Source: Vitrella brassicaformis CCMP3155 (taxonomy: Eukaryota > Protista > Chromerida). Taken from it: a stretch of DNA of 64,000 nt. The stretch lies in the NCBI GenBank assembly GCA_001179505.1, contig CDMY01000347.1, forward strand, positions 372,001-436,000, read 5' to 3'. Both the position numbers and the translations under genes were made by a program. Shown here one piece after another: positions 44,605-48,444 of the stretch (positions are counted from its first letter, which is position 1; each line of letters opens with the position of its first letter). The notes under the pieces were generated by a model, which saw only the letters and a program-made list of their open reading frames with translations, was not told the origin of the DNA and searched no databases.

Positions 44605-45821
44605 ATAGATGCACTCACTGACTTAGCGTAAAGAAACTGCCTGTCGTGCGAGAGGACAGACCGGCGCTCCTCGGCGCCTATTTTTTGACAGACAGACGTG
44701 GATGGATGGATGGATGGATGGATGGAGATCAGACGGTTTTCCCGGGGCGGGGCGGGGTTGGGTGGGGCGGGTGTCTTCGCATGTGGGAGTGCGTCGATAT
44801 GGCAGCTGGCGAGACGTCGACATGAATTCGCGCGTGTGTGAGTGTGCGCATCGAGGAATATGGACCGACGATCCCCGTACGTGCGTGTGCCGGACTCTCG
44901 CTGCCCGATGGATGGCGGCTGTTCAAGTACACTTGACAGCAGCAGAACACGTGTCTGTTTGTAGTGTCTGGTTCAGTCAGCTTCGATCAGCACACGCTGG
45001 CACCACGTGTGCGTGAGAAATGAGCTCGGCCCTCGTCTGGTACTAGAGATGAGGCCGTGTGAAGTCAGAGCGAGTTGGTTGTGCAGTGTCTCAGCTGATC
45101 GATCATGCGGACGGACATCGGGACGCTCTCTGTGCGTGTGCGTATCTTTTTTGTAGTGTGAGGCCATGCATGTGCACACGTACACACACCAGGGGTGTCT
45201 GTCTGTCTCAAACAGAATCATTACAGTATCAATGACTCAAGGCCTCAATTGGCACGTGCAGTCCACACAGTCGACAAAGAGAGCGCAACATCCCCAGACG
45301 CACCCATGCCATCCATCCTGTCTGTCAACACACACAGCTTAATTGCCTTATGCGCTGCGCTGGTCTCTCCACTCCAGAAATTAATGGGAAAATCGACGTA
45401 CGGCAAAAATCCCCAACCAAGGTGCAGATGAAAAAGAGGTGCACGTCTCATGCACAGTTTCAGTGTCACAAGCATGCCCCACATGCATCACACTCCATGA
45501 AGCATGAAACTTACTCTCTGGCTCTACTGATGTTTCAGCATGCATATCAAGGCAACAGACAGAACAAGCATCCACAAGCAGAGAGGGAAGACATGGCCAC
45601 ACACATACATACTTACACACAACAAATATACATGTCCTGGGTATGGGACCCTGCATGACGGACGGCAAGTAAGGCCGCCACACGACGACAAACTCACTCA
45701 CTCGACAGCAAAAATCCGACTCACTAGAGGTAAAAACACACGTACGTAGACAGGGAGTGCATCCATCCTCCTACTACTGCATGGAGACCAGAGCGATCAC
45801 ATGCGCATGCACTCCACTCAG

Positions 45822-47372
45822 CTACGGCGCCATGAGCCCTTCCACGGCTTTCTGCAGGGCTTCAATCGGGCCCGGCGCTGCGTTGCTGCCACTGCTGCCC
45901 TGCTCCAGGCGAGAAATGCGCTCCAGTATGGCGTCATTGGCCTTCATCAGCTCTCCAATCGTCTCGTTCATGGCCTCATTGGCCGCCATCAGGTCCGCCT
46001 TGGCCCTCTTCAGGTCCTCAATCGTCTCGCTCTGGTCTTCATTGGCCTTGATGATGTCTTGTGTGACGCCCATTTGCGTGTAGAGCAGCTGTGTAAGGTC
46101 GATGGTCATCTCCTCAGCCGGAGCCTCGGCAGCGGCGGCATCTGTCGCCCCTTCGCCATTCCCTCCCTCCTCCTGCTCGTCATCATCAGCTTGACGCACG
46201 TGTGGCACGAACGTCTTCACAGCCGACGGGAAGATGTGCTGCACCTCAGCAGCGGCCAGGCCGAGCCGAGCGTCGCCGTCGGCGCGCACACGCAGCTGTC
46301 TGAAGGCCTCATAAGCCGCCGATCGGTCGCTGTCGCTCCATTCAGCCATGGAGGTCGGAAGCTGCTCGCTGTCGGCGCTGTGGATCTCGAACGCGCCTGC
46401 AACCGCCCGGCTGGTGATGACTCGAGATCCGCATTCGCACCTGTGAGCGTCCAGTGTTGGGGCGCGGAGTTCGTCTCGTGCAGTGACATCGTCAGCAGCT
46501 TGGACATCGTCATCGGACTGCACGTCCCTTTTTGCTACGACATCACCTTCGTTCACAACATACTCTTGGGGGTCGCCCGCCTGCACGCCTGAAAGATAAG
46601 CCATCTCAGGGAGCTCCAAAGAACACGTCTGGTCTGTGTAATGGAGCTTACGGCCGCCAATGACCCTTTCAAAGGCACGCACCACTGGTCCAGCGACTTC
46701 CGCACGGGCAATCACGTTCCCTTCCGACATGACGTGGGCACCTTTCGCCTCAATATTGAAACCGGCCACAATATTTCTCTCAGCAACGACATCGCCATGG
46801 TCCGCTGCTTGGTCAGGATCGCCCGCGATAAGGCCTGACCAAGCAGCGTGGAATAAGAGCTTCGTTCATTTGTCCGTTGAATTCGATCAGCTTACTGTCG
46901 AATGCCTTAACGTCGCCGATTGCCTCAACGTCGCCGAATGCCTTAATGTCGCGACCCCCAACGATGTCACCAGCCGCCCACATGCCGGCCTTCGCCGTCA
47001 CCATCCGGTCGGCGATGACATTCCCTTCAGCCACAATATCACCGTCGCCCACGAACGTATCGGGATTGCCCGCAACGATCTCTGCCAGCACAACCACCAC
47101 AAGCAAGTAGGTGCATCCAGCGGTGCGTCTGTCTTTCGTCCATTCCTCCGTTTGGCTCACTCTTGCAACCGCCGTCGTCCTGACGAATGCAAGCAGTCAC
47201 ACGTTTAGCCCACCCACATGGGTTCAGGCGTGCTCGTCCGGTGTGTTCACGTGTGTGCCGTTCCTCCGTCATCACTCACCTCTGGCTTCTCCGGGTCACA
47301 CACACTTTGTCCACGATGGACGGTGAAGGCGAGGCAGACACCGACGAGGAGGGCGAGGCGAGGAAAGGCCAT
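45822..47372 (-). CDS. Secreted phage tail-fibre-like protein: GDVxA repeats, degenerate S74 intramolecular chaperone and coiled coil; three exons
   Basis: Exon 1 MAFPRLALLVGVCLAFTVHRGQSVCDPEKPE|gtgagt. Exon 2 IVAGNPDTFVGDGDIVAEGNV…GDVEAIGDVKAFD. Intron 46835-46895 (GTAAG…TCAG). Exon 3 …GLAAAEVQHIFPSAV…MTIDLTQLLYTQMGVTQDIIKANEDQSETIEDLK. Confidence 0.75.
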
Positions 47373-47432
47373 TCTGTCGGAGAAAGGGATCGGCCGTTAG
47401 CGGCGTTAACGGCCAGATGTGCGCGTGAAGCG

Positions 47433-48444
47433 ATGATGAGAAGGGTGAAGGGTGACAGCTCGTGTTCCAAGGAATTGGCCCGATGAGATCCGCTACCTCG
47501 TCACGAGCGTCGCTGAAGATGACTCATGGGATGCCATACCCCGGCAACACATCCCTGCCTCCGATGGCCTGCAGGGGCTGCGCATCCAGGAGATAACGGA
47601 CGAGAGCCATCCGCTGGTGGGCGAGTAAGTGAGCGACGCACTCGATGGCCCATCGACGTGTGTCACTTTCGATGAAGGCTGTGCTGTGCGCTGCATGGTG
47701 CGGGGCGGTTGGTGTGTCTGCAGACGGTGCCTGGTCGCTGCGAGAAGGTCAACCAACTGCAATTAAGAGGAGAAGGAGAGCCACACAGGCTACTTGATCA
47801 TGGTTTCATGCGATGATTCCATTGTGTTGGGTTGGTTGCCTCCCTGCCTGTCTGTGTTCTCTTGCAGATGGGAGCCCTTTGAAGTGCTCGGCGAGTAGGT
47901 CTGACTGACGTCGATGGAGCAGTGGGTGGATGTGACGTGCTGCCCTGTCTGTCCCCCCGCCCTTTGTTGTGTTGTGTGCTGCAGGTACACGGGGTACCTG
48001 GTCCCGCCGTCACGCGATGGCCCATACGTCTGCAAAGTGAGCGGGTGGGCCGGCCACAGAGGGCCGACAGATAGAAGTGCTGCTGCTGATGACATGGATT
48101 TCTGTGCATTGGCCGCAGTTGGTGCAGGACGAGGCCGACTGGGAAGCTGTGTCGGTCGACGCATCCAAGTACGGCCGCTTGCTCATGCGCCCTCCTGTGG
48201 TCATCGGCATCCATGTGTGGTGTCCGTCAGGGCCGGGAACGAGCTCCGTTTTGTCAACGACTATCGCGGCATCGCGGAGCAGCCCAACGTCACGTTCAGC
48301 AGCTGCTTCATCGACGGGCTGCCGCGGACCCTGCTGGTGGTGACGAGGCCTGTGGCCTTCGGTGAGGAGTTCTTGGCCGATTATGGTCAATCGTATTGGG
48401 CGGCGAGGGGTGGTGGCTCAAAGGGGGGCGGGGCAGATGAGTGA
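47433..48444 (+). CDS. Small SET-domain protein
   Basis: Exons RNWPDEIRYL…ITDESHPLVGE, FEVLGE|YTGYL, VSVDASKYG and NELRFVNDYRGIAEQPNVTF…VVTRPVAFGEEFLADYGQSYW (RFxN and ELxxDY motifs). 5' end unresolved. Confidence 0.85.

What the first reader, a model, noticed from the sequence alone, without database searches (positions are those of the whole stretch)
45822..47372. Intron-containing secreted eukaryotic protein built like a phage tail fibre, with an S74-type chaperone
Seen: signal peptide, then about 170 aa of roughly six-residue G-D/N-V/I-x-A repeats in three blocks each opened by AG(D/N)P, then AGAFEIHSAD…GLAAAEVQHIFPSAV…TIDLTQL, and a heptad coiled coil. The gene has spliceosomal introns. 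Established: phage fibres and endosialidases use a trimeric beta-helix followed by a peptidase S74 chaperone (SDxRxK, GxIAQEVxxxxPExV, then coiled coil); the well-known eukaryotic S74 proteins are MYRF/MrfA transcription factors. Inference: a domesticated phage-derived trimeric adhesin or filament. The catalytic SDxRxK is degenerate (S-A-D-S-E-Q-L), so the chaperone may stay attached.
Basis: partly seen in the sequence, partly recalled or inferred. Interest (0 to 1): 0.85.

Follow-up and report, generated by a model that had tools for sequence, protein, structure and literature searches.

The report
Algal secreted fibre with dead phage-type cap
The coral-associated alga Vitrella brassicaformis expresses a spliced five-exon gene for a secreted repeat-built fibre protein whose tail is a distant, no longer self-cutting relative of the trimerising "chaperone" cap of phage tail fibres. 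It is one of at least 11 paralogues in this alga, none of them studied.

Summary
A minus-strand gene at 47372-45822 encodes a 415-aa protein (P0001, Vitrella brassicaformis CCMP3155). It has a signal peptide, about 175 aa of six-residue repeats in three AG(D/N)P-opened modules, and a CxC. An S74/ICA-like domain, ten uninterrupted heptads and a conserved GLMAP end follow.

Correction: there are five exons and four GT..AG introns, including a 19-nt microexon. All four joints are seen in spliced contigs from three studies.

S74 homology is real but remote:
- Pfam gives no hit for this protein.
- It hits the C-terminal end of a phage tail-fibre PHROG (E 3.8e-5).
- The family profile aligns to a canonical S74 paralogue (hhalign 96%, E 3e-9).
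- Without that paralogue, it aligns to four phage S74 domains (94%, E 9e-8).

The Ser-Lys motif S-D-x-[RK]-x-K is absent from all relatives examined except P0021, so the cap probably stays attached.

Host neighbours, shared intron positions, a syntenic orthologue (dN/dS 0.37) and transcripts show a domesticated host gene.

Not shown: a phage rather than eukaryotic-virus donor, a trimer or triple beta-helix, or adhesin function.

The scan has already noted this S74 family repeatedly elsewhere in this genome, with similar readings.

The parts
47280..47372 (-). Exon 1 (93 nt, aa 1-31): start codon, signal-peptide-like N-terminus and the first conserved Cys (C25). The transcript contig reaches at least 47387, which is 5' UTR.
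   Evidence: Paralogues have equivalent N-termini and the same 93-nt first exon.
47161..47179 (-). Exon 2: a 19-nt microexon encoding DDGGCK, with the second conserved Cys (C36).
   Evidence: It is present in annotated protein P0001, is joined in the spliced contigs of X1 and X6 and is mapped exactly. Paralogue P0004 has the same 19-nt exon.
46896..47081 (-). Exon 3 (186 nt, phase 1-1): beta-solenoid module 1, opened by AGNP and built of six-residue x-D/N-V/I-x-A-x repeats.
   Evidence: The AlphaFold2 model has short strands here with pLDDT 74-87.
46652..46834 (-). Exon 4 (183 nt, phase 1-1): beta-solenoid module 2, opened by AGDP.
   Evidence: pLDDT 83-88.
46440..46588 (-). Start of exon 5: beta-solenoid module 3, opened by AGDP, with very acidic DDV-type hexads.
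46431..46439 (-). CxC motif (C211-E-C213), 8-10 residues before the S74-like domain. It is conserved in 13 of 18 relatives. Inferred to be an inter-chain disulfide staple.
   Evidence: The disulfide role is inference only. A cysteine annulus in the P22 tailspike autochaperone is a precedent (PMC3357383).
46035..46409 (-). S74/ICA-like intramolecular-chaperone domain (aa 221-345). It lacks the Ser-Lys dyad and carries a 30-aa acidic insertion (aa 289-320) before the TIDLTQL strand.
   Evidence: phrog_1980 tail fibre, E 3.8e-5, aa 265-364. hhalign 96%, E 3e-9 to P0021, which carries PF13884. hhalign 94.4%, E 8.9e-8 to phage S74 domains with P0021 left out. No S-D-x-[RK]-x-K motif.
45894..46106 (-). 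Ten uninterrupted heptads (aa 322-392). They continue the last helix of the S74-like domain as a long coiled coil.
   Evidence: AlphaFold2 helix 325-391; heptad register.
45822..45872 (-). Conserved C-terminal motif GPIEALQKxxxGLMAP, followed by the stop codon. Its role is unknown.
   Evidence: 9 of 18 relatives end in GLMAP.

Best explanation
This is a domesticated host gene of Vitrella brassicaformis. It is one of at least 11 paralogues in this genome.

It encodes a secreted, very acidic fibre protein (76 Asp+Glu against 38 Lys+Arg). The proposed mechanism follows established S74/ICA biology and is inference:
1. In the ER, the C-terminal S74-like domain and its 70-residue coiled-coil extension associate first, into a parallel trimer.
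2. This sets the register for folding of the upstream hexad-repeat beta-helical shaft, which is built from exon-sized modules.
3. The catalytic Ser-Lys dyad is gone, so the cap is not cut off. It stays as a permanent trimerisation base.
4. A conserved CxC just upstream probably adds inter-chain disulfides.
5. The mature product would be an extracellular or wall-associated trimeric fibre, with a fast-evolving shaft as the interacting surface.

Shown: gene structure, expression, family membership, remote S74 homology, loss of the motif, purifying selection, and a beta-solenoid in a monomer model.

Inferred: the trimer, lack of cleavage, the disulfides, the location and the binding role.
For: - Gene and splicing.
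- Family: all named members are Vitrella, and only 22 hits at E<=1e-3 appear in 1.8 billion representative proteins.
- S74 homology: (lead only). The top Foldseek hits for the domain model are the MyRF ICA domain (7dc3) and phage chaperone 3gud, though weak. The model's secondary-structure order resembles the helix-rich ICA layout described for MyRF.
- Dyad lost.
- Trimerisation of ICA domains is driven by the C-terminal triple coiled coil, and cleavage needs S587/K592 in MyRF (PMC8326128).
- Solenoid: pLDDT 70-88, fitting right-handed beta-helices at 3.1-3.7 A over 172-177 residues.
- Host context.
- Shared exon layout, with phase 1-1 module exons in P0001 and P0004.
- Syntenic orthologue with dN/dS 0.37 over the last exon. 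The gene ends are 87-90% identical in DNA, while the middle shaft modules are not alignable.
Against: - Pfam PF13884 does not hit this protein even at E<=10.
- Family profiles find no solved S74 chain by sequence.
- The S74 part is modelled at pLDDT 30-56 only, and the fold matches are not significant (E 0.2-3.8).
- No multimer model could be run, so the trimer and the shaft type (three single-chain helices or one intertwined triple helix) are open.
- The exact alignment of the former cleavage site is uncertain: MAFFT and hhalign place it differently.
- Asn alternates with Ile at heptad position a. This does not by itself indicate a trimer.
- No localisation or functional data exist.
Confidence: 0.6

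Rival explanations
1. The repeat region is a bactofilin-like polymerising beta-helix. The protein would then form long homopolymeric filaments rather than discrete trimeric fibres, as UniRef's name 'Polymer-forming cytoskeletal' suggests. The tail would only bundle them.
For: The UniRef name. The model is a right-handed three-sided solenoid with inward V/I and A. There are weak FapA beta-solenoid hits in paralogues (E 0.03-0.5) and a weak ESM lead to bactofilin clusters (0.84).
Against: No PF04519 hit in any of the 16 relatives scanned with Pfam (six at E<=10, ten at E<=1), nor in the exon pieces of this gene. Bactofilins are cytoplasmic, whereas this protein has a signal peptide, paired cysteines and an S74-like tail. 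The FapA hits are far below the cut-off (10-14 bits against 31).
Confidence: 0.12
2. The S74-like domain still cleaves itself using substitute residues, for example Ser231 or Ser234 with a neighbouring His or Arg. The chaperone would then be released as in phage fibres.
For: Ser residues persist at about the right distance (18-21 aa) before the first conserved helix. One paralogue (P0021) keeps an intact SDEKFK.
Against: No Lys at the motif position in any of the 17 other relatives. In MyRF, S587 and K592 are both indispensable (PMC8326128). This segment is the least conserved part of the domain and fails to align to phage S74. The long coiled coil and the conserved C-terminal motif are under constraint, which suggests they are part of the mature product.
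Confidence: 0.1
3. It is a fibre gene of an integrated virus (polinton-like virus, virophage or giant virus) or a decaying remnant of one. It would not be a host gene with a host function.
For: S74-capped fibre genes are reported as ubiquitous in polinton-like viruses integrated in protist genomes (PMC12220804).
Against: Four spliceosomal introns and spliced transcripts in culture-derived runs. Neighbours within 10 kb are a galactosyltransferase, a sugar transporter, WD40 proteins and a SET protein, with no viral hallmark gene. Paralogues are dispersed on different contigs. A syntenic orthologue has dN/dS 0.37. No relative was found in IMG/VR contigs.
Confidence: 0.04
4. Contamination or mis-assembly: a bacterial or phage gene wrongly placed in a eukaryotic assembly.
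For: The protein has a phage-like architecture.
Against: GT..AG introns are removed in transcripts from three studies. The contig is 475 kb and carries eukaryotic genes. The gene's DNA occurs in several independent runs.
Confidence: 0.01

Closest known systems
C-terminal intramolecular chaperone (Peptidase S74 / ICA, PF13884) of phage tail fibres and tailspikes, such as K1F endosialidase and T5-like and T4-like tail fibres
   Same: The position is the same: the C-terminal end of a beta-helical repeat protein. The order of elements is also the same: a helix, a hairpin, a G-x-x-A-x-x-V-x-x-x-x-P-x-x-V segment, an I-D strand, then a long helix continuing as a coiled coil. Profile-level homology was found.
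   Different: There is no Ser-Lys dyad, so release is unlikely. The domain carries a 30-aa acidic insertion and a much longer coiled coil, plus an extra conserved C-terminal motif. The gene is eukaryotic, intron-bearing and signal-peptide-led. It does not reach the Pfam threshold.
MYRF / Dictyostelium MrfA
   Same: These are eukaryotic host proteins carrying an ICA domain whose C-terminal triple coiled coil drives trimerisation (PMC8326128, PMC3742443). MyRF ICA (7dc3) is the top, though weak, fold match.
   Different: MYRF has an Ndt80-type DNA-binding domain and a transmembrane helix, and it cleaves itself through S587/K592. This protein has none of these features. It is secreted, repeat-built and apparently non-cleaving.
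S74-capped fibre proteins of polinton-like viruses and algal giant viruses
   Same: These are S74 domains at the end of modular fibre proteins encoded in protist-associated DNA (PMC12220804).
   Different: Those are virus genes with laminin-G, collagen-like or adenovirus-fibre modules. This gene is a spliced host gene among host genes, with a hexad beta-solenoid and a dead dyad. No viral relative was found.
Vitrella paralogue P0021 (CEM34855.1), already labelled 'Peptidase S74 domain-containing protein' by UniProt
   Same: Same genome, also with a signal-peptide-like N-terminus. It is homologous over the S74 part and the start of the coiled coil.
   Different: P0021 keeps SDEKFK and passes Pfam (57.5 bits). 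It has no hexad solenoid, and five of its six introns fall at or within its S74 part.
Bactofilin and other right-handed triangular beta-helices (antifreeze protein 3p4g, tapirins, two-partner-secretion domains)
   Same: The monomer model of aa 40-223 fits these at 3.1-3.7 A over about 175 residues. The repeats have an inward V/I-x-A pattern.
   Different: There is no sequence-family match. The shared shape of a repeat solenoid does not show kinship.

Membership tests
Peptidase S74 / ICA domain (PF13884, MEROPS S74) | Match to the Pfam model above its gathering score | tested here: not met
   No PF13884 hit for P0001 or its exon pieces at E<=10. Paralogue P0021 does pass (57.5 bits against 22).
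Peptidase S74 / ICA domain (PF13884, MEROPS S74) | Demonstrable homology to bona fide S74 domains | tested here: met
   P0001 against phrog_1980 tail fibre, C-terminal end: E 3.8e-5. Family profile against P0021: hhalign 96%, E 3e-9. Family without P0021 against four phage S74 domains: 94.4%, E 8.9e-8 over 83 columns.
Peptidase S74 / ICA domain (PF13884, MEROPS S74) | Catalytic Ser-Lys dyad in S-D-x-[RK]-x-K | tested here: not met
   The motif is absent from P0001 and 16 other relatives and present only in P0021. This segment does not align to phage S74.
Peptidase S74 / ICA domain (PF13884, MEROPS S74) | ICA fold | tested here: inconclusive
   The domain model has pLDDT 56. The top Foldseek hits are 7dc3 (MyRF ICA) and 3gud (phage chaperone), but at E 0.2-3.8 and TM 0.37-0.42.
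Peptidase S74 / ICA domain (PF13884, MEROPS S74) | Trimerisation and autocleavage | not testable with these tools
MYRF / MrfA transcription factors | Ndt80-type DNA-binding domain and a transmembrane anchor flanking the ICA domain | tested here: not met
   No such Pfam domains. The only hydrophobic stretch is the N-terminal signal peptide.
Bactofilin (PF04519) | Match to the bactofilin profile, in a cytoplasmic protein | tested here: not met
   No PF04519 hit in any of 16 relatives. The protein has a signal-peptide-like N-terminus.
Left-handed hexapeptide-repeat beta-helix (PF00132-type) | Hexapeptide profile match and a left-handed helix | tested here: not met
   A six-residue period is present but there is no Pfam hit. 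Left-handed helices fit the model only at about 11.5 A rmsd, against 3.1-3.7 A for right-handed ones. This rests on a monomer model.
Integrated viral element (polinton-like virus or giant-virus fibre gene) | Viral hallmark genes nearby, and no host-type gene structure | tested here: not met
   Host neighbours, four introns, spliced transcripts and no IMG/VR relative.

The most novel reading that the evidence does not exclude
A eukaryote has taken a viral fibre module into its own secretory repertoire and re-engineered it. The self-cleaving S74 chaperone has become a permanent, disulfide-stapled trimerisation base. The shaft is built from phase 1-1 exon modules that are gained, lost and diverge quickly. 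The family has expanded to a dozen or more secreted fibres. They might serve as surface adhesins, wall fibres or decoys against viruses that use similar fibres. Outside MYRF, this would be a separate and mechanistically different domestication of the S74 domain by a cellular eukaryote.
Probability: 0.3. Interest if true: 0.75.

Novelty: new variant of a known kind. Interest (0 to 1): 0.55.

Why it matters
The S74 chaperone is the textbook example of a folding cap that cuts itself off. In cellular eukaryotes it is known essentially from MYRF, where the cut releases a transcription factor.

Here an alga uses the same module in secreted fibre proteins and has lost the cutting residues. That gives a natural test of whether the domain can act as a permanent trimerisation base.

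It is also a clear case of a virus-type structural module becoming an ordinary, intron-bearing, expanding host gene family. The biology of Vitrella's cell surface is almost unknown, so these proteins are candidate wall, adhesion or virus-interaction factors.

The value is tempered. UniProt already auto-labels several paralogues as S74-containing, and this scan has met the family many times in this genome.

Tried and rejected
- Single-sequence Pfam on the exon pieces and on 16 family proteins found no S74 (except in P0021), no bactofilin and no hexapeptide family. Only coiled-coil noise and sub-threshold FapA hits appeared.
- phmmer and two family profiles against all PDB sequences gave only coiled-coil noise, or nothing.
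- Foldseek on the full-length model gave nothing significant. The ESM Atlas shape search gave TM <= 0.41 for matches spanning the protein.
- The ESM feature search of the repeat part alone gave weak leads at 0.85.
- A word-seeded search with P0021's S74 region found only P0021 itself.
- Scans of IMG/VR viral contigs and JGI metagenome contigs with the family's most conserved peptide pattern gave no confirmed relative. No donor or wider distribution could therefore be shown.
- A second paralogue in this window was sought and not found (tblastn).
- The left-handed hexapeptide-helix reading was rejected on rmsd.
- Contamination was rejected because of splicing.
- The sequence beyond the contig break at 47447 was searched in the window and is absent.
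Full report
WHAT IS THERE

The finding lies on the minus strand. Reading 47372 down to 45822 and splicing gives a protein identical to database protein P0001 (415 aa, 'unnamed protein product', Vitrella brassicaformis CCMP3155, on a 475-kb contig). Exact mapping of P0001 on the window gives five exons:

| Exon | Window coordinates | Length |
|---|---|---|
| 1 | 47372-47280 | 93 nt |
| 2 | 47179-47161 | 19 nt |
| 3 | 47081-46896 | 186 nt |
| 4 | 46834-46652 | 183 nt |
| 5 | 46588-45822 | 767 nt, stop included |

The four introns are 100, 79, 61 and 63 nt and are all GT..AG. My own first attempt without the microexon had to use a non-standard acceptor.

EXPRESSION AND SPLICING

Contigs of public runs laid on 45600-47600 include intron-less records. 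In X1 and X6 they join 46587|46651, 46833|46895, 47081|47161 and 47178|47279. X8 shows one of these joints. The skipped ends read CT..AC on the plus strand, which is GT..AG on the gene's strand. The runs come from three studies.

A contig of X7 runs unspliced across 46486-47112, as expected for DNA or pre-mRNA. The transcript contig reaches 47387 at the 5' end and continues about 500 nt below 45600 at the 3' end. Paralogue P0004 also has intron-less transcript contigs that translate to it exactly (L003, L004).

ANATOMY OF THE PROTEIN

- aa 1-31: a signal-peptide-like N-terminus. This is read from the sequence and from equivalent N-termini in paralogues, since no predictor was available.
- C25 and C36: these bracket an acidic stretch. 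The pattern C-x(5-10)-C-x-[KR]-[IL]-[IV]-A-G-[ND]-P recurs in paralogues.
- aa 39-210: three modules, each opened by AG(N/D)P at aa 41, 103 and 164.
  - They are built of six-residue units of the type G/x-D/N-V/I-x-A-x.
  - The six-residue period is far beyond chance: lag-6 identity 0.236 against 0.087 +/- 0.021, z 7.2, with none of 5000 shuffles reaching it.
  - Modules 1 and 2 are exactly exons 3 and 4. Both are phase 1-1, and module 3 opens exon 5.
- aa 211-213: CEC. A CxC at this place occurs in 13 of 18 relatives.
- aa 221-345: the S74-like segment, interrupted by a 30-aa acidic insertion (aa 289-320).
- aa 322-392: ten heptads without a break (a = TLTNIKNINIS, d = LQIQLLMLIL).
- aa 400-415: GPIEALQKAVEGLMAP. 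Nine of 18 relatives end in GLMAP.
- The protein is very acidic, with 76 D+E against 38 K+R.

IS THE TAIL AN S74/ICA DOMAIN?

Direct tests were negative:
- Pfam gives no PF13884 hit for P0001 or its pieces, even at E<=10.
- Neither P0001's C-terminal part nor family profiles find a solved S74 chain by sequence.

More sensitive tests were positive:
1. P0001 alone matches the last 80 positions of PHROG 1980 ('tail fiber protein') at E 3.8e-5 (aa 265-364 against profile 364-444 of 449).
   - Paralogues hit the same end of the same family: P0009 at 9.3e-8, P0004 at 4.5e-5 and P0021 at 3.9e-14.
2. An exhaustive profile search of 1.84 billion representative proteins with the family's C-terminal part returned only 22 proteins.
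   - One is P0021, which carries PF13884 at 57.5 bits (cut-off 22) with an intact SDEKFK.
   - hhalign of the family against P0021 gives 96% probability, E 3e-9, over 103 columns.
3. P0021's S74 part finds T5-like and T4-like phage tail fibres at about 30% identity, with E down to 2e-7.
4. To avoid leaning on P0021, I aligned 11 family members without it against the S74 ends of four phage proteins (L008-L011).
   - hhalign gives 94.4%, E 8.9e-8, over 83 columns.
   - The alignment runs from the first conserved helix (AYEAFRQLRV) through G-L-A-A-x-E-V-Q-x-x-F-P-S-A-V and T-I-D-L into the coiled coil.
5. Weaker, concordant signals:
   - 39 of the 40 nearest ESM Atlas clusters are PF13884 (top score 0.91).
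   - The low-confidence domain model (pLDDT 56) has the order helix, hairpin, helix, strand, strand, long helix.
   - Its top Foldseek hits among 350,000 chains are the MyRF ICA domain 7dc3 and phage chaperone 3gud, but at E 0.2-3.8 and TM about 0.4.

I conclude that the tail is a remote homologue of the S74/ICA domain. It is not a member by Pfam's own threshold.

THE CATALYTIC MOTIF

A regular-expression scan of 18 relatives finds S-D-x-[RK]-x-K only in P0021.

The segment where it should lie, about 18-21 residues before the first conserved helix, reads H-S-A-D-S-E-Q in P0001. It varies among paralogues, for example S-D-S-R-N-Q and S-D-T-D-N-Q.

MAFFT and hhalign place it differently, and it does not align to phage S74 at all. 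Under either placement no Lys is present.

In MyRF, S587 and K592 are indispensable for cleavage, and the C-terminal triple coiled coil is the main force for trimerisation (PMC8326128). Loss of self-cleavage with retained trimerisation is therefore the most economical inference. It is not shown.

THE SHAFT

A monomer AlphaFold2 model built on a 6-sequence alignment gives a regular solenoid for aa 45-219 at pLDDT 70-88, with loops at the AGDP openers.

An all-against-all structural search fits right-handed beta-helices at 3.1-3.7 A over 172-177 residues:
- antifreeze protein 3p4g, Z 13.5, 20% identity;
- tapirin 4wa0;
- HxuA 4i84;
- a phage Andhra tail protein, 8egr.

Left-handed hexapeptide helices score high Z values but fit only at about 11.5 A rmsd, which I read as a handedness mismatch. 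A monomer run cannot produce an intertwined triple beta-helix, so the true shaft type is open.

There is no bactofilin or hexapeptide Pfam hit. Only sub-threshold FapA solenoid hits occur in four paralogues.

A HOST GENE FAMILY

- All named relatives are from Vitrella brassicaformis CCMP3155, on different contigs: P0001, 2, 4, 6, 7, 9, 10, 12, 15, 20 and 21, plus P0024, a gene model that also contains a tubulin-tyrosine-ligase-like part.
- UniProt already names six of them 'Peptidase S74 domain-containing protein', while P0001 is named 'Polymer-forming cytoskeletal'.
- Genes within 10 kb of P0001 are a galactosyltransferase, an MFS sugar transporter, two WD40 proteins and a SET protein. No viral hallmark gene is present.
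- P0004 has the same 93-nt and 19-nt first exons, followed by phase 1-1 module exons of 150, 156 and 33 nt. This fits a shaft that grows and shrinks by exon-sized modules.
- P0021 has six introns, five of them at or within its S74 part.
- A metagenome contig (ENA ERZ893784, L006) carries a syntenic orthologue of P0004, next to the same diphthamide-synthesis gene.
  - The last exon is 82% identical in protein, with dN/dS 0.37.
  - The gene's ends are 87-90% identical in DNA, while the middle shaft modules cannot be aligned at DNA level.
  - The cap and coiled coil are therefore constrained, and the shaft changes fast.

ORIGIN

No close relative exists outside Vitrella-like sequences in the representative library, in IMG/VR or in JGI metagenome contigs by pattern. 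'Phage-derived' is not shown.

S74-capped fibre proteins are reported as ubiquitous in polinton-like viruses integrated in protist genomes (PMC12220804). A search also surfaced papers on algal giant viruses that mention the domain. A eukaryotic virus is at least as plausible a donor.

HOW IT MOST LIKELY WORKS

The protein enters the ER. The S74-like domain and the long coiled coil trimerise first and set the register for the shaft. No cleavage follows. The CxC next to the domain may form an inter-chain disulfide ring. As a precedent, reactive C-terminal cysteines take part in the autochaperone step of the P22 tailspike (PMC3357383).

The product would be an acidic extracellular trimeric fibre. 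Its function as an adhesin, a wall fibre or a virus-interaction factor is open.

Confidence:
- About 0.8 for 'expressed host gene encoding a secreted solenoid plus remote S74 homologue plus coiled coil'.
- About 0.6 for the full non-cleaving trimer model.
- About 0.3 for any specific role.

RELATION TO EARLIER NOTES OF THIS SCAN

Thirty-two notes in this genome mention S74. They include follow-ups on other paralogues that also report a Vitrella family and loss of the lysine. One reports a giant S74-capped fibre family said to be shared with dinoflagellates and Perkinsus. I used these as leads only. The lysine loss was tested here on my own set. The wider distribution was not tested.

VERDICT

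The gene is a new variant of a known kind of module. It is interesting but not unique within this genome, and databases already flag it automatically in paralogues.

Noticed in passing
window 47447-47600: In all four runs, contigs match this stretch with 1-3 differing letters and then break at 47447. In each run one contig runs on for 79 nt of sequence absent from the whole window. A near-identical copy of this segment probably lies elsewhere in the genome.
   Followed up: partly
window about 47695-48444, + strand: The divergently oriented neighbour is a small intron-containing SET-domain gene (131-aa annotated product, weak PF00856). Its start lies about 320 bp from the fibre gene's start codon, so the two may share a promoter region.
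   Followed up: no
window below 45600 (3' side of the gene): The spliced transcript contig of run X6 continues about 500 nt beyond 45600. That is more than 700 nt past the stop codon, so there is either a long 3' UTR or read-through toward the next gene.
   Followed up: no
P0007 (CEM27653.1), another Vitrella contig: This paralogue repeats the coiled-coil-plus-terminal-motif unit three times (GPIEALRKVAVG, then LLQGLMAP, then IVEGLMAP). The GLMAP-type end therefore behaves as a module of its own, with unknown role.
   Followed up: no
P0024 (CEL94505.1, 1154 aa), another Vitrella contig: This annotated protein joins a tubulin-tyrosine-ligase-like 9 protein to a family member's S74-like tail. 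The MMETSP transcript (P0008, 188 aa) has only the tail, so the long model is probably a fusion of two neighbouring genes.
   Followed up: no
L006 and L007 (ENA metagenome assembly ERZ893784): This metagenome holds a second Vitrella-like organism. Its orthologue of P0004 is syntenic, 82% identical in protein over the last exon and has the same exon layout. The prokaryotic gene caller split the eukaryotic genes into fragments.
   Followed up: partly
L001 4001-5223 (P0021 gene): P0021, the one relative examined here that keeps an intact SDEKFK, has seven exons. One intron falls right after the catalytic motif (aa 122/123). It sits next to a leucine carboxyl methyltransferase gene.
   Followed up: partly
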